Source: Octopus bimaculoides (Eukaryota). Taken from it: DNA of 37,879 bases. The DNA lies in the NCBI RefSeq assembly GCF_001194135.2, contig NC_068990.1, positions 16,843,860-16,881,738 of the forward strand. The letters run 5' to 3'. The translations under genes were made by a program, and so were the position numbers. Shown piece by piece: positions 4,962 to 37,879 of this stretch (its first letter is position 1; every line of letters begins with the position of its first letter). The notes beneath the pieces are model-generated. The model was not told where the DNA came from and did not search any database. It saw only the letters and a list, made by a program, of their open reading frames with translations.

Positions 4962-5256
4962 ACTTTTTAAGCCTGGTGCTTCTTCTATCAGTCACTTTTA
5001 CCAAATCATTAACTTATGGGATGTAAACAAACCGACACCAGTTAAGTAGTGCTGGTGGAACAAACACACACACACATAATGGGCTTCTTTCAGTTTTCAT
5101 CTACCAAATCCACTCATATAAAGGCTTTGGTCAGCCAGAGGCTATAGTAGAAGACACTTGCTCAAAGCATCATGCAGTGGGACTGAACCTGGAACCATGT
5201 GGCTGGCAAGCAAACTTCTTACTAAGTAGTCATGCATATATATAATAAATAAAAAA
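4962..5256 (-). mobile_element. Composite SINE copy (reverse)
   Basis: Reverse complement of head (5081-5256) and tail (4962-5070) separated by (CA)n. Confidence 0.75.
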
Positions 5257-5816: not shown

Positions 5817-6369
5817 CTGTGAAAGAACAAAACATCAAATTGTGATCAGAAGGAAAATTTTACTTGTTAACATTATTGTTGTGATTATTATTATTAAAAG
5901 TTGCTATTTTTTTGTAGATGTTTGTATTGGTTGATTAAACCCTAATGGTTTTTAACCCTGCCAATGATTGCATAGTTACCAATCAGGTGAAGGGGTTTTC
6001 TTTTGGATAGGGTTTAAAATGCTTCTGTGTGTGTGCGTGCATGTGTGTGTGTGCGTGCATGTGTGTGTGCGTGTGTGTGCATGTGTGCGTGCGTGCGCAC
6101 GCAGTATAATCCCAGGTCTGCTGGATCAGATCGACTCTTCGACTAGACAATGGCAGCCTTCTAAGTTCTTTTAGGGGTGGAGAACACAATTACATCATTG
6201 CTATAATTATTATTTCTACATTATGCACAAGTTCTGAAATTTTGTGGAGAGGAGCTAAGCAATTACACTGGACCCCACCCTGACCTCAATTGGTACTTGT
6301 TTTAGCAACCCCAAAAGGCTGAAAGGTGAAGTTGACCATGGTAGAATCATCTTTGGCATAATGATGATG

Positions 6370-6473: not shown

Positions 6474-6605
6474 TGTTGAGATTTTAGTCTCTGATGTGTA
6501 TTTATTCAAGATTGGGGTAAGTTCTCGCTTTTTCCGTCTTTGACTCTCAACAATCTTATATTCCAAGCTCACACCAACTGGAGTCAATTTGTCTCGTATA
6601 TTTTC
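6474..6605 (-). CDS. Integrin alpha exon (ENIRDKLTPVGVSLEYKIVESQRRKKRELTPILNKYTSETKIST, thigh)
   Basis: Acceptor cttttaag, donor ACA|gtaagg; 132 nt, phase 0 to 0; RDKLTP and L.PIL motifs. Confidence 0.95.
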
Positions 6606-6642
6606 CTTAAAAGACAAACAAAAATAAAGAAACCTGTTATAT

Positions 6643-7164
6643 NNNNNNNNNNNNNNNNNNNNNNNNNNNNNNNNNNNNNNNNNNNNNNNNNNNNNNNNNN
6701 NNNNNNNNNNNNNNNNNNNNNNNNNNNNNNNNNNNNNNNNNNNNNNNNNNNNNNNNNNNNNNNNNNNNNNNNNNNNNNNNNNNNNNNNNNNNNNNNNNNN
6801 NNNNNNNNNNNNNNNNNNNNNNNNNNNNNNNNNNNNNNNNNNNNNNNNNNNNNNNNNNNNNNNNNNNNNNNNNNNNNNNNNNNNNNNNNNNNNNNNNNNN
6901 NNNNNNNNNNNNNNNNNNNNNNNNNNNNNNNNNNNNNNNNNNNNNNNNNNNNNNNNNNNNNNNNNNNNNNNNNNNNNNNNNNNNNNNNNNNNNNNNNNNN
7001 NNNNNNNNNNNNNNNNNNNNNNNNNNNNNNNNNNNNNNNNNNNNNNNNNNNNNNNNNNNNNNNNNNNNNNNNNNNNNNNNNNNNNNNNNNNNNNNNNNNN
7101 NNNNNNNNNNNNNNNNNNNNNNNNNNNNNNNNNNNNNNNNNNNNNNNNNNNNNNNNNNNNNNNN
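6643..7164. other. Assembly gap (522 N); other gaps at 15165-15174, 21761-21998, 27341-27515, 31187-31717, 33209-33253, 37238-37370
   Basis: Runs of N in the sequence. Confidence 1.
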
Positions 7165-7536
7165 GTGGATGTTACTGTTGCTTTAGCCCCAGGAGGACAT
7201 CTCCTCCAGCTGGCTTATCGACACACTACTGTGTCCTGTTTGTTTTGCCAAGGGAAGTTATCCCTCTCATCGTGATCTGTAGCACGAACGGACCCGGGTT
7301 TCAGGGTTATTTCCCTTCGTCAGCGTCCGATAGCTACCGACCTTCGATGAGAGATATAAATTCTTGGCAACCTTATGTATATTTTTCCAGTGAAATTCTT
7401 CACTGATATCGAAAAAGTGAAAACAAGCAATGTTAATTCTCTAAATGAAGTATTAACAGTAACTGCACGATAAAGTGAAGTGTATTGCCACTTAAGTGTG
7501 GCTGACCCTTAGGGGTGGATGTTACTGTTGCTTTAG
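7165..7536 (-). mobile_element. 350-bp HHR-containing unit with a 22-bp direct repeat (retrozyme or Penelope pLTR-like)
   Basis: gtggatgttactgttgctttag occurs at 7165-7186 and 7515-7536; the unit contains HHR-1, is CpG-rich relative to its flanks and abuts the gap 6643-7164. Confidence 0.65.
7285..7329 (-). ncRNA. Type I hammerhead ribozyme motif (HHR-1), sense to the integrin pre-mRNA
   Basis: Minus strand reads CGGACG-CTGACGA-AGGG AAATAA CCCT-GAAA-CCCGGGT-C-CGTTCG: intact CUGANGA/GAAA core, 4-bp stem II, palindromic stem III ACCCGGGT, GUC cleavage triplet, 6-bp stem I with further flanking helices. Confidence 0.88.
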
Positions 7537-7932
7537 GTTATGTTTAAAATCAAAATTTAGATAGAAGACTTTAATTTGTCGTATCTAAACCTTGTTTTGG
7601 GTATGTTACTGGTGTGCCTTGGGAGCATGTTCACCACATATGGCTACCAAGCATCATCCACGGTACTGCACTTTAGTCACAGGATCTACATAAGGAATTC
7701 CTCAGTGCATGTTTAGTATATATTAAATAATTGATGGGGAAGACAAAGTACTGTAAGTTTTATTTAGGCACAGGAGTGGCTGTGTGGTAAGTAGTTTGCT
7801 CACCAACCATATGGTTCCGGGTTGTATGTTGTCCATAATTAAAAAAAAAATTCATAGTCAGTGTAAGTAATAGAGTGACCATACTGAATATACTGTGAAC
7901 CCAGCCATGCAGATCTTAAGTAAATGAAATAC

Positions 7933-8081
7933 CTTGAGATAAGCCTGGTGTCGGACAGATTTGGCTTCACCTTTTACTAAAGTGAATGTTTGAGTCTTTG
8001 AGATCTCATTGCCAGCTTCCATGTAAAAAACTCTGTGAGTTTTGTTATTCAAGGCATCTAAGGTCCATTTTACTTCCAAAC
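7933..8081 (-). CDS. Integrin alpha exon (LEVKWTLDALNNKTHRVFYMEAGNEISKTQTFTLVKGEAKSVRHQAYLK, thigh)
   Basis: Acceptor ttttcaaag, donor AAG|gtattt; 149 nt, phase 1 to 0; LD..K..R.F and AYL thigh motifs. Confidence 0.92.
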
Positions 8082-16644: not shown

Positions 16645-16962
16645 CTGAAAATGAATAATAAAACTTTTAATTAAAAGAAAAAAAACTGGTGAATGCAACA
16701 CACACACTCACAGAGGCATACAGAGTAAAAGGAATAAAATTATTGAAGATATTGAAGTATATAGCTCCCCCACCCCCACCATGTCCTGTATATAAATTCC
16801 ATCAGGGTTTGACTTCATCTGTTAACTCTCCAGGGTCTGATGGAATGAGTACAAGTAATACACTAAGGCATATTTCAAATGGCTAACTGAAAAGTCAGTC
16901 TAGTGTGTGTGCGTATATGTATATATACATACACACATATTTATGTATGTATGTATATATGT

Positions 16963-17133
16963 AGGCATAGGCATGGTTATATGGTAAGAAGCTTGCTTCC
17001 CAATCATATGGTTCTAGGTTCAGTCCCACAGCAGGGCACCTTGGGCAAGTGTTTTCTCTTAAATCCTTGAGCTGACCAAAGCCTTGTGAATGGATTTGGT
17101 AAATGGAAACTGAAAGAAGCCTGACATATATGT

Positions 17134-17220
<87 letters not shown>

Positions 17221-21552: not shown

Positions 21553-21760
21553 TAGGCGCAGGAGTGGCTGTGTGGTAAGTAGCTTGCTTACCAACCACAT
21601 GGTTCTGGGTTCAGTCCCACTGCATGGCACCTTGGGCAAGTGTCTTCTACTATAGCCTCAGGCCGACCAAAGCCTTGTGAGTGGATTTGGTAGACGGAAA
21701 CTGAAAGAAGCCCGTCGTATATATGTATATATATATATATGTATGTGTGTGTATATGTTT
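21553..21760 (+). mobile_element. Composite SINE head plus (TA)n, running into gap 21761-21998
   Basis: Little-diverged, CpG-retaining copy (ggcgcagg, ggccgacc, agacggaaac, cccgtcg). Confidence 0.85.
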
Positions 21761-22180: not shown

Positions 22181-23712
22181 CTGAAAGATTAATTAAAAAT
22201 AAATTAATAAATAAAAGAATGAACAAAAAAAAAATTAAAATAAATTGAAATGGAGTTTTAATATGGCTGTGAGGTTAAAAAGCTTGCTTTACAACCATGT
22301 TCAGTCCCACTGAAGGACCTCTTTGGCATGTATCTTCTACTATAAACTCAGGACGATCAACACCTTAAGAGTGGATTTGGTCAGCAGAAACTGTATGAAA
22401 GCCCATCATATATATTATATAAATGAAAAAATATATAAACAAATGACATAACATACTGAATGTAAAAACAAACAGGAGACAAAGAGAAAGTCCATAATTC
22501 TTCATCAGTTATCGACCAACGGGACACTTCAGTTTCACACCTTTAACGATAAGACTGAATGCTTCCCAAATGGCAGTGCACGCAAAAAAAAGTTTTCTTG
22601 CATAGAATTAGGGACAAGAGCAAACAAAACGAAACAAAACAAGCAAAACGACGCAGTGTGATTTAGAACAGGGAACAAGGACAAACAGTTGAACAAAATA
22701 TGGCCTTGGGGCCAAAAAGAGAAGAATAGTAGGTAATGCTTCGAAAATGTTTTGAACAATGGAGAACTGTTAGACAGAATTTGCAACTGGTCAGCTAAGG
22801 GACCAATATAAGAAAGGAAGAAAAAGAGGAATTGGCTGCTGGTCACATGACAGCAGCATATGTGTGTGAGTGTGTGTGTGTTACCTTGCTGCATAACACC
22901 TGGTGTTGCTTTGTTTATGTCTCTGTAACATTAGTAGTTTAGCAAAAGAGTCCGATAGAATAAGCACCAGATTTTAAAAGTAAGTCATTGGGGTTGATCT
23001 GGTCAACTAAAACCCTTCAAGGTAGTGTTCCAGCATGGCCACAGTCCAGTGATCGGAACAAGTAAAAGATAGAATGAAAGTAATTTTAGGTGAAGTGGAG
23101 AGAAGGGTGCTATGTGGTCACTCTACATGCTAGAAAAAGCCACCAAATACCCTCAAATAACACCTAACTGGTTTATGTAAAGAAAAGGCAACATTATAAT
23201 GATAGTGAATGATATTGTAATCTCATGCTCTTCTAAAATCATGCCATGGTTGTAGCTGGAAAGTTTTTGATCTCGTCAGCTTTGGGATCTAGAATCAGTG
23301 AAGTTTTGGTGAATTTGAAATTTGAAGACTTTAATATCATCTTAGTAATGAGAAAATCAGTTGTTTTACTACATTTTTCTAAATGTTTAATGCAGTCACT
23401 CATGTATAAGTTGCATACAAATTTTTTTCCCCTTGTATTTTTAGCTATGTTCTGTGTATAAGTTGCACCCCAGTTTTTTCACTTAAAATCAACTATAGAA
23501 TAATACAACTTAACCATGAGTAAATACAGCAATTATTTTCAAAATGAAATGAAATAAAAAGACAGTGCATTTCATTGGAAACATTGTAAAGAAAGGGTTA
23601 AGATGAAGCTCCACATACATGCCGACTAATTATTATTTTTACAAGTTCTTTTAAAAATTATGGGTGGAGTAGCAGACTAGGAAGTAGAAAGGGAAATAAA
23701 CTCCTGAGTAAT

Positions 23713-24135
23713 AGGCACAGGCGTGGCTGTGTGGTAAGAATCTTGCTCCCTAACCACATGGTTCCGGGTTCATCCCCACTGTGTGGAAGCTTGAGCAAGT
23801 GTCTTCTACTATAGCCTCAGGCTGACCAAAGCCTTGTGAGTAGATTTGGTAGATGGAAACTGGAAGAACCCCATCGTATATGTATGTATATATATATGTA
23901 TGTATATATGTATGTATATATTTTGTGTGTGTGTGTGTGGTTGTGTTTGTTCCCCTGCCATTGCTTGACAACCGATGGTGGTGTGTTTATGTCCCTGTAG
24001 CTTAGCAGTTTGGCAAAAGAGACCAATAGAATATGTACTAGGCTTACAAAAAATAAGTCCTGGGGTCGATTTCTTCGACTAATAGCCTTTAAGGCGGTGC
24101 TCCAGTATGGCCACAGTCAAGTAAAAGAATAAAAA
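23713..24135 (+). mobile_element. Composite SINE, full-length copy ending about 25 nt from the 24159 splice donor
   Basis: aggcacaggcgtggctgtgtggtaagaa head, (TA/TG)n middle, tail ending gtaaaagaataaaa. Confidence 0.85.
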
Positions 24136-31038: not shown

Positions 31039-33136
31039 TCATCATCATCATCATCATCATCGTTTAACGTCCGCTTTTGGCAACACCAGGCTCCAATCTA
31101 AATTTGGCAGAGTTTCTACAGCTGGATGCCCTTCCTAACGCCAACCACATGCTAGCATGGAAGGCGGGCGTTAAACGATGATGATGNNNNNNNNNNNNNN
31201 NNNNNNNNNNNNNNNNNNNNNNNNNNNNNNNNNNNNNNNNNNNNNNNNNNNNNNNNNNNNNNNNNNNNNNNNNNNNNNNNNNNNNNNNNNNNNNNNNNNN
31301 NNNNNNNNNNNNNNNNNNNNNNNNNNNNNNNNNNNNNNNNNNNNNNNNNNNNNNNNNNNNNNNNNNNNNNNNNNNNNNNNNNNNNNNNNNNNNNNNNNNN
31401 NNNNNNNNNNNNNNNNNNNNNNNNNNNNNNNNNNNNNNNNNNNNNNNNNNNNNNNNNNNNNNNNNNNNNNNNNNNNNNNNNNNNNNNNNNNNNNNNNNNN
31501 NNNNNNNNNNNNNNNNNNNNNNNNNNNNNNNNNNNNNNNNNNNNNNNNNNNNNNNNNNNNNNNNNNNNNNNNNNNNNNNNNNNNNNNNNNNNNNNNNNNN
31601 NNNNNNNNNNNNNNNNNNNNNNNNNNNNNNNNNNNNNNNNNNNNNNNNNNNNNNNNNNNNNNNNNNNNNNNNNNNNNNNNNNNNNNNNNNNNNNNNNNNN
31701 NNNNNNNNNNNNNNNNNAAAAAAAAAAAAAAAAAACGAGCAGAAAATAAAAATTAAATCTGGAAATTTTTTTAAATAAAACAAAGAAATAAACAATGAAA
31801 ATGAAATTTAATGACTTCATCAGATAAACAGAGTAGTAGTCAATTAAAATACATTTTATCTTTTACATTTTCCAGTCATTAGACTGTGGCCATGCTGGGG
31901 CACCACCTTGAAGAATTTTTAGTTGGATAAATTGACCCCCGGTACTTACTACTACTACTACTACTACTAACTATTAAGGCAGTGAGCCGGCTAAATTTTT
32001 AGCATGCCAATTTGTTCATCTTAACATTCTGAGTTCAAATTCTGCTGAGGTCGATTTTGCCTTTCATTCTTAAGTACATTGCCTAAGTATTAGTCGATAT
32101 CATAGACTCTCTCCCTCCCTCGAAATAGCTGGCCTTGTGCCAAAATTTGAAACCATTATTATTATTAATTTTTTTTTGTTAGCCTGGTACTTATTCTATC
32201 GGTCTCTTTTGCCAAGCTGCTAGGTTACAGGTACTTAATGTACACATATTGTCAATAGGTCAGTTCTTGCAGTATTCATCCTCTCTTATGGAGTTGCTGG
32301 GTTAAAAATATCAGAGAAAGGCAAAAATTCATACCAGCAGTGGCCTAGCAGGCACACCAGATGTATTTTGGCCTTTTGGTGCCTTTTCAATGGTCCATAT
32401 TCATCATAGTAGTATTATAATGAGAGGGACAAAACATTGAGGGAATTGTAGTAAGGATATGTACCTTGCTAGAAATAGCAGTTGAATTCCTTCAAATCAT
32501 ACATTGGGTTTTCTTTTACTAGTTTTGGTCACTGGAGTGAGGACATGCTGTGATGCTGACCTCAAAGGTTGAGTTGTTTATTTCAGATTCGGTATTCTAT
32601 CTGGTACTTATTTAATCTATGCTGTTAGAGGAATAATGCAAAACAGATGAGATGGAAACTGTACGAAGCTCACTGAACACATATGTATACATATATATAT
32701 GTATATATTAAAATAATAATAATATATGTATACAATTATATTAAGGGGGCAAGGATGAAAACGGTATGTACAATTATTTGTATCTATATTCCCTGTGTAT
32801 TGTGTTGGCAAAAGAAAAATGCCTGTTTTATGGTTTTAATCCAGAAATTGGAACCAATTCACAATTAACATGAGGTCTTTCACTAGTCTGCTTTCAGCCA
32901 TTTGTATATTTCATCTGGAGTTTTTGGTAGTTTTTTGAAGGTCTCAGCCCTTCAAGCATGCTGGAGATAGGTCCTTTTCACCATTGCTCCCTTAATATAA
33001 TTATATACATATGTATATTATTATTTTGATGTATAAATTACCTATAAATTTTTATAGCATGCTGACTAGTTGATAAATTTTTATCCTTATAATCTATATA
33101 CGTATATATATACACACTTACACACACATGAATGTA

Positions 33137-34786: not shown

Positions 34787-35849
34787 AAAGTACTTTAAAA
34801 CAGGAAAGTTTGTTCCACAGAACCAAGAACATATTCAGGTGGGTTGGTAACAAAAGGACAAAGAGGAGATTTTTTCTTTCTGTTTTTTTTTTTCTTTACA
34901 CTTTGTCCAAAGCTTTAGCTCAGTAATGATTTGATTCAGCAAATTTGTTTGAATGGAATCAAAGTAAGAGAGGAGGATAAGCAGTGACTCTTTCAGAAAT
35001 CATCATCTTTTAATGGTAGATCACATGCCCTGAAGATCAAATTATTAGTTTATTTGTAAAAGTTCTTTTGTCATAAATACTGTGACTTCTTTGATGATTT
35101 TCTGACCGGTGTGTCTCCTCTTGTCCTGCTTGTCCCGTTTTGGAAAGTCACTGAAGAAATCACAGCATGTGTGGTGAAAGAACTTTGCCAAATAAACTAA
35201 AATTAATAATAATAAAGCTAGAGTGAAGATCAAATAAACAGTGTGTGTGTTTAATTGTCAAAAGATGACCATCCCCAAGTATAACAATATCCCTTAACAA
35301 TATTTTGATACTTTCATCTTGAAATAGTACAGTTTATAAATATAGTGTTTGTATTAACCTTTGCTTATCAACCAGTCATGTTCTATCATTTTGTCAGATA
35401 GAGGGGGGAAGCTCCATGACACTCTCAATCCTTTTATTTTTCAGAGTCACCAGAGAAGAGAAGAAATGCAAAGAGACCTTGCATGAACTCTAGCAACAAA
35501 CCAAATTCCATTTAAAACACTCAAGGATTGGACAGGAGTTAAGCTGACTCATTTGGTACCAATCCAACAGATGCCACTCCTGATAGAAATTTTATTTTAA
35601 AGTGATCAAACTAAAACCTTCCATCAAAATTCAATATTAATTTATGTTCCAAACACCAGCGTAATATTGACAAAGTTACTTTACTAAACTCTTCATTTTC
35701 AAAATGAATTGAAGCAAAGACCATGGATCTGCCAGATCAGATTGGAGCCTGGTGCAACCATCCGGTTCACCAGTCCTCAGTCAAACCGTCCAACCCATGC
35801 TAGCATGGAAAGCGGACGTTAAACAATGATGATGATGATGATGATACAT

Positions 35850-36257
35850 AGCAAGCATGACCGTGTGATAAGAAGCTTGCTTCCCAAACACATGGTTCCA
35901 GGTTCAGTCCTACTGCATAGCACCTTGGGCTAGTATTTTTTACTATAGCATTGTAAGTGGATTTGGTAGCTGGAAACTGAAAGAAGACCATCAAGTATAT
36001 GTGTGTGTGTGTGTATGTGTGTGTGTGTGTGTGTGTGCATGCATGTGTGTTTATGTCTGTGTTTGTCCCCCACTACTGTTTGACAACCAGTATTGATGTG
36101 TTTACATCCTTGTAACTTAGCAGTCCAGTAGAAGTCACTGATAGAATAAGTATCAGGTTTAAAAGAAAAGTACTGCAGTCAATTCATTCAACTAAAATTC
36201 TTCAAGGCAGTGCCCCAGCATGGCCACAGTCTAATGACAGAAACTGGTAAAAGATAA
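35850..36257 (+). mobile_element. Composite SINE copy
   Basis: Same head, (TG)n middle and tail ending ggtaaaagataa. Confidence 0.8.
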
Positions 36258-37733
36258 CAACAGCATTACAGCTTCAAACTTGCAAGAATGTGATTTGCTG
36301 TCAAAAGTTTTTTCAGTAACCAATCCATGCCAAGCTTATGTTTTTCTGCCTCTTTCCACTGTTTTCAATAACTTATTCTGTTTATTATTAATAGCTCTTC
36401 TTCACACATAATAAAACACTTCTTGACACTCTTTCATTTCCTTTCATAAAACTTTATTATTTTCCACGTGAGCAGCTGGTCTGATGATACAGATACCGCA
36501 TCTTTGTAAGTTATTATTAGTAAACAGGTTATTGGTCTGCAGTTAAAAACATCCCGATTATGAAAGAAATTTGGCTGCTATTTTTAGCAAATTGAGCAAC
36601 CATGTAAAGGCTGCCTCTTTCAAGTCGTCATATTTAATTAGTTGTGATAGTTGACAGTTCTTACAAACAAAACAGATGAAAAATAGTAGTAAAAGAATTC
36701 TGTTTTTACCCTATCAGCCAGCATCCTGAGGCTATTTTAAGTCAGCAGATGCCCTAAATGTGAAACCCTGTATGGGGTCTCCTCTTGACTCACCATACTG
36801 ACTTCCTCACTATCATAGATGACCCCACAAAACACTAAATGACTTGGAGACAATTAGGAAACAGAGTCAAAATAGAAACACAACCTGATGGGGGAATTAA
36901 CAGATGTTATTATTAGGAAATATGAGACTAATGAATCATTGAGAAGCTCAGCACTAATACAGTAAATCATTGTCAGACATTGCTGTGTGGTTAAGGAGCT
37001 GACTTCCCAACCACAGGGTTTATGGTACAATCCCACTGTTTGTCAGTTTATGGAGTTTGTATTTTTTTCATGGCTTTGAGTTGACCAATGCCTTCTAAGT
37101 GAAATTTGGTAGATAGCGACTGTTTGGAAGTCCATCCTATATATGTGTGTTTGTAAGCATGTGTTTTAAGTGCATGTGTACGTGCACACACACACACACA
37201 CATATGTATATAAAAATATATATATACAGACACACACNNNNNNNNNNNNNNNNNNNNNNNNNNNNNNNNNNNNNNNNNNNNNNNNNNNNNNNNNNNNNNN
37301 NNNNNNNNNNNNNNNNNNNNNNNNNNNNNNNNNNNNNNNNNNNNNNNNNNNNNNNNNNNNNNNNNNNNNNNATATATAAACAAATAGTAAATGAGTATAT
37401 GCATATATACGTACAGGTATGTGCATACCGACATCCACCTGTATGTATAGGTGCATATCTGGGTACAGGACATTGCAAACAAACGTAGACGAGAAAACAC
37501 ACAAGCCACATAGAGAACATTCTACTTCATCAGCTACCCACGTTTTAATGAAAGATAAAAAGCACCCATGGCAGTGTCATATTTAGAGCACCTCATGCTG
37601 GTGCCACATAAAATTCATTCAGCCACAGAAACCATGACTAAACAGACAATTGGAGTGTGGGCAGTTCTCTGGTTGGTTAGTCCCTGTCAAACCATCCAAC
37701 TCATGCAAGCATGGAAAACAGACGTTAAATGAT

Positions 37734-37879
37734 GGGGTTGGAAATGAGTACAGCAATGAATTCCGGGTAGAGGTAGGGGTCCACCAAGGTTCCGTCCTCA
37801 GCCCCCTCTTATTTATCATAGTCCTCCAGGCAATCACAGAGGAGTTCAAGACAGGTTGCCCCTGGGAGCTCCTCTATGC
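37734..37879 (+). mobile_element. 5'-truncated RTE-type LINE, reverse transcriptase fragment (runs off the window)
   Basis: Stop-free frame GVGNEYSNEFRVEVGVHQGSVLSPLLFIIVLQAITEEFKTGCPWELLY(A): non-LTR RT motif GVxQGSVLSPLLF leading into the expected YADD. Confidence 0.9.

What the first reader, a model, noticed from the sequence alone, without database searches (positions are those of the whole stretch)
7258..7358. Intact hammerhead ribozyme in the sense strand of an integrin intron
Seen on the minus strand: stem I CGGACG/CGTTCG, core CTGACGA (7323-7317), stem II AGGG/CCCT with loop AAATAA, GAAA (7302-7299), perfect palindrome ACCCGGGT, and cleavage triplet GTC with the predicted cut between 7291 and 7290. 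Stem I extends through GTAGC/GCTAC, GGTC/GATC and a perfect 9-bp CTCTCATCG/CGATGAGAG helix, about 30 bp in total, which is hard to explain by chance. Known: type I hammerheads with a short palindromic stem III occur in Penelope-like elements and animal retrozymes and cleave as dimers. Inference: the motif is transcribed as part of the integrin pre-mRNA (intron 6606-7932), so it could cut the nascent transcript or release a small RNA. Stem II closes with A-U rather than the usual G-C.
Basis: partly seen in the sequence, partly recalled or inferred. Interest (0 to 1): 0.9.

Follow-up and report, generated by a model that had tools for sequence, protein, structure and literature searches.

The report
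Retrozyme-type hammerhead ribozyme in integrin intron
The motif is a real, intact hammerhead self-cleaving RNA, but it sits in a 350-base mobile-element repeat (an animal "retrozyme", related to Penelope-like elements) that landed in an integrin-alpha intron, so it is a new copy of a known kind of element, not a new kind of gene control.

Summary
On the minus strand, 7329-7285 is a complete type I hammerhead: CUGACGA, GAAAC and GUC, with the predicted cut between 7291 and 7290. Helix I is 6 bp, helix II 4 bp, and helix III is 2 bp plus the palindromic loop CCGG. Helix I extends into a 126-nt hairpin. The motif lies in the sense strand of intron 7932-6606 of an integrin-alpha gene. A strict descriptor gave 0 hits in 2000 shuffles of the window. 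A covariance model built from four published, self-cleaving retrozyme hammerheads ranks this site first (22.1 bits). No Rfam family reports it at any threshold.

The motif sits in a 350-nt unit (43% GC, no ORF, very stable fold). The first 22 nt of that unit recur exactly 350 nt downstream and run straight into an assembly gap. That fits a non-LTR retrozyme, or Penelope-derived repeat, in tandem or with a tail.

A lone copy is predicted to prefer an inactive fold. A modelled tandem dimer has the double hammerhead as its minimum-energy fold.

No other genomic copies could be retrieved, so family conservation, covariation and cleavage remain untested. I rate it a new member of a known kind, of modest interest.

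The parts
7285..7329 (-). Type I hammerhead ribozyme proper: helix I (6 bp), CUGACGA, helix II (4 bp plus loop AAAUAA), GAAA, helix III (A-U, C-G plus CCGG), GUC, and the helix I 3' strand.
   Evidence: Read directly from the sequence. Top hit of model R1, which was built from four published retrozyme hammerheads: 22.1 bits, E about 3e-4, all 12 pairs standard. It is the only descriptor hit in the window, and 0 of 2000 shuffles matched at the strict setting.
7290..7291 (-). Predicted self-cleavage site, between C17 (7291) and C1.1 (7290).
   Evidence: Follows from the hammerhead numbering applied to the motif. Cleavage itself was not tested.
7245..7370 (-). 126-nt hairpin domain: helix I extended by imperfect inverted repeats out to UUGCCAA (7370-7364) / UUGGCAA (7251-7245).
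   Evidence: RNAfold of the 101-nt stretch (z -4.76) and of the 350-nt monomer; inverted repeat I8.
7187..7536 (-). One full 350-nt repeat unit (candidate retrozyme monomer). 43.4% GC; no ORF over 36 aa on the sense strand.
   Evidence: The period is defined by the exact 22-nt direct repeat (D8). GC. The circular monomer folds at -111.1 kcal/mol, z -6.4 against 200 shuffles. No tRNA-like head. No other copy in the window.
7165..7186 (-). First 22 nt of a second unit, identical to 7536-7515, cut off by the gap. Alternatively a PLE-type 'tail' or a long target-site duplication.
   Evidence: 100% identical repeat at 350-nt spacing. It directly abuts the N run.
6643..7164 (.). Assembly gap (522 N) that hides the rest of the insertion. 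As sized, it could hold one more complete unit, including a second hammerhead.
   Evidence: Five of the seven gaps in the window are flanked by microsatellites; this one is not.
6606..7932 (-). Host intron (GT at 7932-7931, AG at 6607-6606) of an integrin-alpha gene. The hammerhead is in the sense orientation, 641 nt after the donor site.
   Evidence: splice sites and reading frame; Pfam.
7933..8081 (-). Upstream integrin-alpha exon (Ig-like domain 1).
   Evidence: The joined exons match PF08441 at E 2.9e-12.
6474..6605 (-). Downstream integrin-alpha exon (Ig-like domain 1).
   Evidence: PF08441 at E 7.8e-8 alone and 2.9e-12 joined.

Best explanation
The motif is the self-cleaving ribozyme of a small non-coding retroelement: an animal non-LTR retrozyme, a class now argued to derive from the terminal repeats of Penelope-like elements. 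The element inserted in sense orientation into an integrin-alpha intron. At least one 350-nt unit is present, and the start of a second copy runs into an assembly gap.

Inferred mechanism, taken from the published family:
1. Multimeric transcripts form the hammerhead. Here this is most favourably a double hammerhead, in which the palindromic ACCCGGGU segments of two adjacent copies pair into an 8-bp helix III.
2. Each core cuts after GUC, releasing a 350-nt monomer with 5'-OH and 2',3'-cyclic phosphate ends.
3. A tRNA ligase circularises the monomer.
4. A Penelope-like reverse transcriptase copies the circle back into DNA.

For the integrin gene the element is a passenger. It is transcribed in the pre-mRNA. 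If the gap hides a second copy, the intron could be cut and a 350-nt RNA released. A lone copy should cleave poorly.

Shown here: the motif, the repeat unit, the intron context and the predicted folds. Inferred: cleavage, circularisation, mobility and copy number.
For: - All invariant positions are present: CUGANGA, GAAAY and RUH.
- The architecture equals the canonical metazoan type I hammerhead described in PMC4209133: helix I 6 bp, helix II 4 bp, helix III 1-2 bp plus a palindromic 2-4 nt loop.
- The layout is the same as the self-cleaving mussel Mg353 (GAAA-CGCGCG-UC) and axolotl Ax353 (GAAA-CACGUG-UA) retrozyme hammerheads in the PMC7229834 supplement.
- Model R1, built only from those published sequences, ranks the site first in the window at 22.1 bits.
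- The 350-nt period falls in the published 150-450 bp range and matches mussel repeats of about 350-390 bp. GC of 43% fits the published <45-50%.
- The unit has no ORF, no tRNA-like head and no LTR.
- The monomer fold has z = -6.4.
- The modelled tandem dimer has the double hammerhead as its unconstrained minimum-energy fold: -161.0 against -145.6 kcal/mol for two single hammerheads.
- Chance is excluded by shuffles.
- The gap adjacent to the repeat is not microsatellite-flanked, unlike most gaps here.
Against: - Only 1.06 units are visible, so a tandem arrangement is not proven. The 22-nt repeat could be a tail or a target-site duplication.
- No other copy exists in the 38-kb window.
- No related sequence could be retrieved from any collection. 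Multi-copy status, core conservation and stem covariation are therefore untested.
- Rfam hammerhead models do not report the site.
- The 10.1-11.1 pair is A-U, not the highly conserved G-C.
- The isolated motif prefers an inactive pairing by about 6-8 kcal/mol in the nearest-neighbour model.
- The source organism is unknown to me, so the presence of Penelope-like elements in it is unchecked.
Confidence: 0.75

Rival explanations
1. It is a solo or truncated terminal repeat (pLTR) of an autonomous Penelope-like element, not a retrozyme. The hammerhead would be the element's own pLTR ribozyme, and the 22-nt repeat would be the 30-40 bp 'tail' typical of PLE insertions.
For: PLE pLTRs carry type I or minimal hammerheads that are thought to act as dimers (PMC4209133). 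PLE insertions often carry a 30-40 bp extension at one end and often break short-read assemblies (PMC8557442). Retrozymes and pLTRs are reported to be homologous, so the distinction is partly semantic.
Against: There is no RT or GIY-YIG reading frame in the visible flanks, and the 522-nt gap as sized cannot hold a PLE ORF. Metazoan PLE min-HHRs typically have helix II of 6-8 bp, an unpaired base before 10.1, helix I of 4-5 bp and little or no helix III (PMC4209133). This motif has the canonical 6/4/2-bp layout instead.
Confidence: 0.15
2. It is a domesticated intronic hammerhead with a host function, as proposed for the amniote RECK (HH9) and CTCL (HH10) ribozymes. It would modulate integrin-alpha mRNA biogenesis or isoform choice by co-transcriptional cleavage.
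For: It has sense orientation within the intron, an intact core, and lies 641 nt downstream of the donor site. Intronic type I hammerheads derived from retroelements are conserved in amniote genes (PMC6155905).
Against: It sits inside a repeat unit with a duplicated end next to an assembly gap, which points to an insertion and not to an old conserved element. There is no Rfam HH9/HH10 hit. The lone copy is predicted to misfold. Conservation in orthologous introns could not be examined.
Confidence: 0.05
3. It is a chance match to the hammerhead consensus within an unrelated inverted repeat.
For: Rfam models are silent. Chance core matches are abundant in very large databases.
Against: 0 of 2000 shuffles matched at the strict setting. 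Fold z-scores are -4.8 and -6.4. The site matches the full length of a model built from validated ribozymes, with no non-standard pair. The palindromic helix III, the 6/4-bp helices and a repeat unit of retrozyme size all coincide.
Confidence: 0.03

Closest known systems
Metazoan non-LTR retrozymes (Cervera and de la Pena 2020, PMC7229834), especially the mussel Mytilus galloprovincialis repeats of about 350-390 bp and the axolotl Rtz_353
   Same: Type I hammerhead with 6-bp helix I, 4-bp helix II and GAAA + 6-nt palindrome + UC/UA. The monomer is 350 nt, low in GC, non-coding and highly self-paired, with the hammerhead embedded in a long hairpin. The hammerhead is predicted to work best as a dimer, as in axolotl.
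   Different: Only about 1.06 units are visible, against dimers to large multimers. The 10.1-11.1 pair is A-U (Ax353 has a U-U mismatch there; most others have G-C). There is no primary-sequence similarity to the published units outside the core. Expression, circular RNA and copy number are unknown.
Minimal hammerheads in the pLTRs of Penelope-like elements (Cervera and de la Pena 2014, PMC4209133)
   Same: Type I topology, palindromic helix III positions that allow dimerisation, and a retroelement context. A short duplicated end resembles the PLE 'tail'.
   Different: The helices have canonical sizes and a 2-bp helix III, where the PLE type has a long helix II with a bulged base and no helix III. 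No RT-endonuclease ORF is nearby.
Classical satellite or SINE-like type I hammerheads: newt satellite 2 and Schistosoma Sm-alpha (my knowledge, plus PMC6155905)
   Same: A canonical type I motif with a weak palindromic helix III in repeats of about 330-350 bp. An A/U-rich 6-nt loop 2 (AAAUAA here) resembles the CAAAAA loop of axolotl Ax330.
   Different: No tRNA-like head, which Sm-alpha has. The loop 1 / loop 2 tertiary-contact nucleotides could not be verified.
Conserved intronic hammerheads of amniotes: HH9 in RECK and HH10 in CTCL (PMC6155905)
   Same: A type I hammerhead in the sense strand of an intron of a protein-coding gene.
   Different: Those are single, ultraconserved and free of repeat context. 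This one carries the hallmarks of a retroelement insertion, and there is no evidence of conservation.

Membership tests
Hammerhead ribozyme, canonical metazoan type I | Conserved catalytic centre: CUGANGA / GAAAY / RUH | tested here: met
   CUGACGA 7323-7317, GAAAC 7302-7298, GUC 7293-7291. Criterion as worded in the PMC7229834 supplement.
Hammerhead ribozyme, canonical metazoan type I | Type I topology with helix I about 6 bp, helix II about 4 bp, and helix III 1-2 bp capped by a 2-4 nt palindromic loop | tested here: met
   The helices are 6 bp, 4 bp, and 2 bp plus CCGG. Definition from PMC4209133.
Hammerhead ribozyme, canonical metazoan type I | G10.1-C11.1 pair at the base of helix II | tested here: not met
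   A7316-U7303 occupies that position. A validated retrozyme hammerhead (Ax353) tolerates a U-U mismatch at this position.
Hammerhead ribozyme, canonical metazoan type I | Loop 1 / loop 2 tertiary interaction | tested here: inconclusive
   An internal loop (UAU / U) lies exactly 6 bp from the core, and a 6-nt A/U-rich loop 2 is present. The specific contacts cannot be judged from sequence with these tools.
Hammerhead ribozyme, canonical metazoan type I | Match to a curated covariance model (Rfam hammerhead families) | tested here: not met
   No hammerhead family was reported at gathering score, nor at E<=10 on 601 nt or 106 nt. By contrast, my own model built from four published retrozyme hammerheads gives 22.1 bits, the top hit in the window.
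Hammerhead ribozyme, canonical metazoan type I | Site-specific self-cleavage after H17 | not testable with these tools
   Requires in vitro transcription. The energy model predicts an inactive alternative fold for the lone copy and the double hammerhead as the minimum-energy fold for a tandem pair.
Non-LTR retrozyme (animal) | Type I hammerhead inside head-to-tail repeats of 150-450 bp (dimers to multimers) | tested here: inconclusive
   One 350-nt unit is visible, plus an exact 22-nt restart that runs into a 522-N gap. TRF sees no array.
Non-LTR retrozyme (animal) | Low GC (<45-50%), no ORF, no LTR/PBS/PPT | tested here: met
   GC is 43.4%. The longest sense-strand ORF is 36 aa. The 79-aa antisense open frame has no homologue. 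There are no flanking long repeats.
Non-LTR retrozyme (animal) | Compact, highly base-paired monomer RNA | tested here: met
   The circular 350-nt monomer folds at -111.1 kcal/mol, z -6.4, and 0 of 200 shuffles fold as well.
Non-LTR retrozyme (animal) | Many genomic copies; expression as linear and circular RNA | not testable with these tools
   There is no second copy in the window. No collection on hand holds the source genome.
Penelope-like element pLTR | Adjacent RT plus GIY-YIG ORF, or homology to a PLE terminus | tested here: not met
   No such ORF lies in the visible flanks. The only RT fragment in the window is 30 kb away at 37638-37877. Homology to PLE termini could not be tested without a repeat library.
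Domesticated intronic hammerhead (HH9/HH10 type) | Conservation at the orthologous intron position across species | not testable with these tools
   A search for orthologous proteins and loci found nothing.

The most novel reading that the evidence does not exclude
The retrozyme depends on the integrin-alpha gene for its transcription. Because it sits in sense orientation in an expressed intron, a tandem pair hidden in the gap would cut the nascent pre-mRNA, releasing a 350-nt circular-RNA precursor and lowering or re-routing integrin mRNA output. That would be an early stage of the domestication seen in the amniote RECK and CTCL hammerheads, in an invertebrate lineage where no such case is described.
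Probability: 0.07. Interest if true: 0.6.

Novelty: new member of a known kind. Interest (0 to 1): 0.3.

Why it matters
If confirmed, this adds one more retrozyme family, possibly in a lineage where none has been catalogued. It also gives a clean natural example of a sense-oriented self-cleaving ribozyme inside a cell-adhesion gene intron. Such a locus can be used to ask how far co-transcriptional ribozyme cleavage is tolerated by splicing.

There are two practical points. First, the curated Rfam models miss this canonical-looking motif, so covariance-model annotation alone under-counts such ribozymes. Second, the repeat probably caused the assembly gap.

None of this changes current understanding. 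Type I hammerheads in 150-450 bp repeats are well documented, and a large share of them lie in introns.

Tried and rejected
1. Rfam cmscan of the whole window at gathering score, and at E<=10 on 601 nt and 106 nt. No hammerhead family was reported. The only weak hits, a pestivirus 3'UTR and the ClpQY promoter, are chance.
2. A search for related copies through the 79-aa antisense open frame and through two 36-aa ORFs of the unit. Nothing was found.
3. A search for orthologous integrin loci with the 93-aa joined exon peptide, to compare introns or close the gap. Nothing was found, so the source genome and its close relatives appear to be absent from the protein collection.
4. A metagenome scan for CTGANGA-N10-18-GAAACCCGGGTC. 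The 120 loci were all chance matches in bacterial coding sequence without the stems. They served only as a negative control.
5. Scans of viral contigs and genome contigs with a more specific pattern. Zero hits.
6. Literal sequence strings in the paper library. One irrelevant hit.
7. BLAST of the unit against the window. No further copies.
8. A tRNA-like head, as in Sm-alpha SINEs. None.
9. A MAFFT alignment of this motif with the four published ones. It put gaps inside helix II, so I did not use it for pair counting.
10. The second R1 hit, at 32396-32354. Rejected as a functional hammerhead because G12 is A.

Full report
**1. The observation**

Read on the minus strand and indexed base by base, the stretch 7353-7264 is:

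CUCUCAUCG-AA-GGUC-G-GUAGC-UAU-CGGACG-CUGACGA-AGGG-AAAUAA-CCCU-GAA-A-C-CCGG-G-U-C-CGUUCG-U-GCUAC-A-GAUC-A-CGAUGAGAG

- The core CUGACGA is 7323-7317.
- GAAA is 7302-7299.
- The palindrome ACCCGGGU is 7299-7292.
- C17 is 7291, so the predicted cut lies between 7291 and 7290.

The three conserved boxes used by the field (CUGANGA / GAAAY / RUH; PMC7229834 supplement) are all intact. Helix I has 6 bp next to the core, followed by an internal loop (UAU / U). It then continues through 5, 4 and 9-10 bp blocks. In the fold of the whole unit it extends to UUGCCAA (7370-7364) / UUGGCAA (7251-7245), giving a 126-nt hairpin. Helix II is 4 bp with a 6-nt loop. Helix III is A-U and C-G plus the palindromic tetraloop CCGG.

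**2. Is it more than chance?**

I wrote a descriptor requiring:
- CUGANGA;
- a helix II with its loop, then GAAA;
- an A15.1-U16.1 pair with at least one inner pair;
- H17;
- a helix I directly abutting the core.

It finds exactly one site in the window on both strands. In 2000 dinucleotide-preserving shuffles of the window it found 8 sites at helix I>=5 / helix II>=3 and none at I>=6 / II>=4, the values seen here. This does not count the extra 18 or more base pairs of helix I.

The 101-nt stretch folds with z = -4.76.

As an empirical control, the metagenome scan returned 120 sequences matching CTGANGA-N10-18-GAAACCCGGGTC. All were chance matches, mostly in bacterial coding sequence, and none combined a 4-bp helix II with a 6-bp helix I.

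**3. Curated and home-made models**

Rfam 15 reports no hammerhead family here. This holds at gathering score over the window and at E<=10 over 601 nt or 106 nt.

I therefore took the four retrozyme hammerheads whose self-cleavage was shown experimentally, as printed in Supplementary Table 2 of PMC7229834:
- coral Amil224;
- mussel Mg353;
- axolotl Ax353;
- axolotl Ax330.

I aligned them, imposed the hammerhead structure, built a covariance model without the window sequence and searched the window with filters off. The site 7329-7285 (-) is the best hit at 22.1 bits. Its E-value of about 3e-4 is rough, because calibration was short. It is aligned over the whole model with no non-standard pair. 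The next hits score 16.5 and 15.6 bits and lack an intact core.

The layout GAAA + 6-nt palindrome + UC is the same in mussel Mg353 (CGCGCG) and in axolotl Ax353 (CACGUG, with UA).

**4. The surroundings**

The flanking exons, 8081-7933 and 6605-6474 on the minus strand, join in frame (phase 0). Together they match Pfam Integrin_A_Ig_1 at E 2.9e-12. Weaker FG-GAP and Ig-like-2 matches lie further up and down the same strand. The hammerhead is in the sense strand, 641 nt after the donor site.

- The 22 nt CTAAAGCAACAGTAACATCCAC occur twice, at 7536-7515 and 7186-7165, exactly 350 nt apart.
- The second copy is cut off by a 522-N assembly gap (6643-7164).
- Five of the seven gaps in the window are flanked by microsatellites, and this one is not.

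So the hammerhead lies at positions 184-273 of a 350-nt unit (7536-7187) that starts again at 7186.

The unit has these properties:
- 43.4% GC;
- no sense ORF above 36 aa;
- no tRNA-like head;
- no second copy elsewhere in the window.

Permuted to run from cut site to cut site (7290..7187 + 7536..7291), and using only observed sequence, the 350-nt RNA folds as a circle at -111.1 kcal/mol. Shuffles give -78.2 +/- 5.2, so z = -6.4, and none of 200 shuffles folds as well.

**5. How it most likely works**

These features match animal non-LTR retrozymes as published (PMC7229834):
- type I hammerheads in head-to-tail repeats of 150-450 bp (about 350-390 bp in mussel, 330 and 350 bp in axolotl);
- GC below 45-50%;
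- no LTR, PBS or PPT;
- compact self-paired monomers;
- abundant linear and circular RNAs;
- circularisation by a tRNA ligase, not by the ribozyme.

A 2026 preprint (10.64898/2026.07.22.740005) argues that these elements derive from, and depend on, Penelope-like elements.

In the nearest-neighbour model the lone motif prefers an inactive pairing. CGGAC.CUG pairs with CGG-GUCCG at -40.3 kcal/mol, against -32.7 to -34.3 for the active fold. This fits the known weakness of hammerheads with a 1-2 bp helix III (PMC4209133; axolotl data).

I then modelled a transcript with two copies 350 nt apart, assuming the hidden copy is identical. Its unconstrained minimum-energy structure is exactly the double hammerhead:
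- both cores are unpaired;
- both helices II are formed;
- an 8-bp helix III forms between the two ACCCGGGU segments;
- helix I of the inner junction closes the monomer.

This fold has -161.0 kcal/mol, against -145.6 for two separate hammerheads.

So the best-supported mechanism is cleavage of multimeric transcripts as dimers, release of a 350-nt monomer with 5'-OH and 2',3'-cyclic phosphate ends, ligation to a circle, and reverse transcription by a Penelope-like RT. Only the motif, the unit and the folds are shown here. The remaining steps are inferred from the family.

**6. Consequences for the integrin gene**

The element would be transcribed within the pre-mRNA. If the gap hides a second hammerhead, the intron could be cut twice and a monomer released. 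As sized, the gap has room for one more full unit: 328 nt would complete unit 2. With a single copy, cleavage should be slow.

Intronic copies are not unusual for this family. In Xenopus about 43% of retrozyme copies overlap introns, only a mild depletion after normalisation. Nothing here indicates a host function.

**7. Rival explanations**

- A solo or truncated Penelope pLTR. This is possible, and the 22-nt repeat resembles the 30-40 bp 'tail' of PLE insertions (PMC8557442). However, no RT/GIY-YIG frame is nearby. The helices are canonical and do not match the long-helix-II, bulged, helix-III-less PLE type.
- A domesticated intronic hammerhead like HH9 or HH10 (PMC6155905). This could not be tested, because no orthologous locus was retrievable. 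The repeat context argues against it.
- Chance. Excluded for practical purposes (section 2).

**8. What could not be done**

It remains untested. None of the collections on hand holds the source genome or a close relative, and the window has no second copy.

I do not know the organism. Integrin alpha makes it a metazoan. The AT-rich, microsatellite-rich, SINE-rich, gapped sequence looks like an invertebrate draft assembly. My impression that it is cephalopod-like rests on memory and was not tested.

**9. Verdict**

It is a genuine, intact type I hammerhead of the retrozyme / Penelope kind in the sense strand of an integrin-alpha intron, but it is a retroelement passenger and there is no evidence for a gene-regulatory device.
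- Novelty: a new member of a known kind.
- Interest: 0.3.

Noticed in passing
window 16962-17163, 21553-21754, 23712-23913, 35846-35953 (+); 5121-5239 (inverted); 7765-7823: A family of roughly 200-nt repeats that look like a SINE and end in microsatellite-like tails. One 59-nt 5' fragment (92% identical to the copy at 21553) lies in the same integrin intron as the hammerhead, antisense to the gene.
   Followed up: partly
window 32354-32396 (-): This is the second-best hit of the retrozyme-hammerhead model (16.5 bits). Its core is UUGAAAA, i.e. U3/A8, a covariation reported for Schistosoma PLE hammerheads. However, it has AAAA where GAAA should be (G12 to A) and no repeat context. It is probably chance or a dead relic.
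   Followed up: partly
window 6643-7164 and the other N runs (15165, 21761, 27341, 31187, 33209, 37238): There are seven assembly gaps. Five are flanked by (GA)n, (TG)n, (TA)n or poly-A. The gap next to the hammerhead unit is not, which suggests the 350-nt repeat itself broke the assembly.
   Followed up: partly
window 37638-37877 (+): A reverse-transcriptase fragment (Pfam RVT_1, E 1.2e-4, below gathering score) is cut off by the window end. It is about 30 kb from the hammerhead and not linked to it.
   Followed up: partly
window 1932, 3923, 6297, 11430, 14554, 14983, 18435, 28147, 29925 (about 60 nt each): A second dispersed repeat family (nine copies, 60-85% identical to the reference copy) of unknown type. 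One copy lies just downstream of the integrin exon at 6297-6356.
   Followed up: no
window 7329-7289 (-): The helix I 5' strand CGGACG can pair either with CGUUCG (active fold) or, shifted, with GUCCG, which spans the cleavage site (inactive fold, favoured by about 6-8 kcal/mol in the lone copy). This may act as a built-in switch that keeps monomers or circles uncleaved.
   Followed up: partly
window about 19.5-19.6 kb and about 5.7 kb (-): Further integrin-alpha exons lie on the same strand. One is FG-GAP-like (FATSAPYGGKDGKGAVYIYHGS), and one is a calf/Ig-like-2 start (DCGPDNICIPDL). Their Pfam matches are weak. The gene therefore spans at least about 5.6-20 kb of the window.
   Followed up: partly
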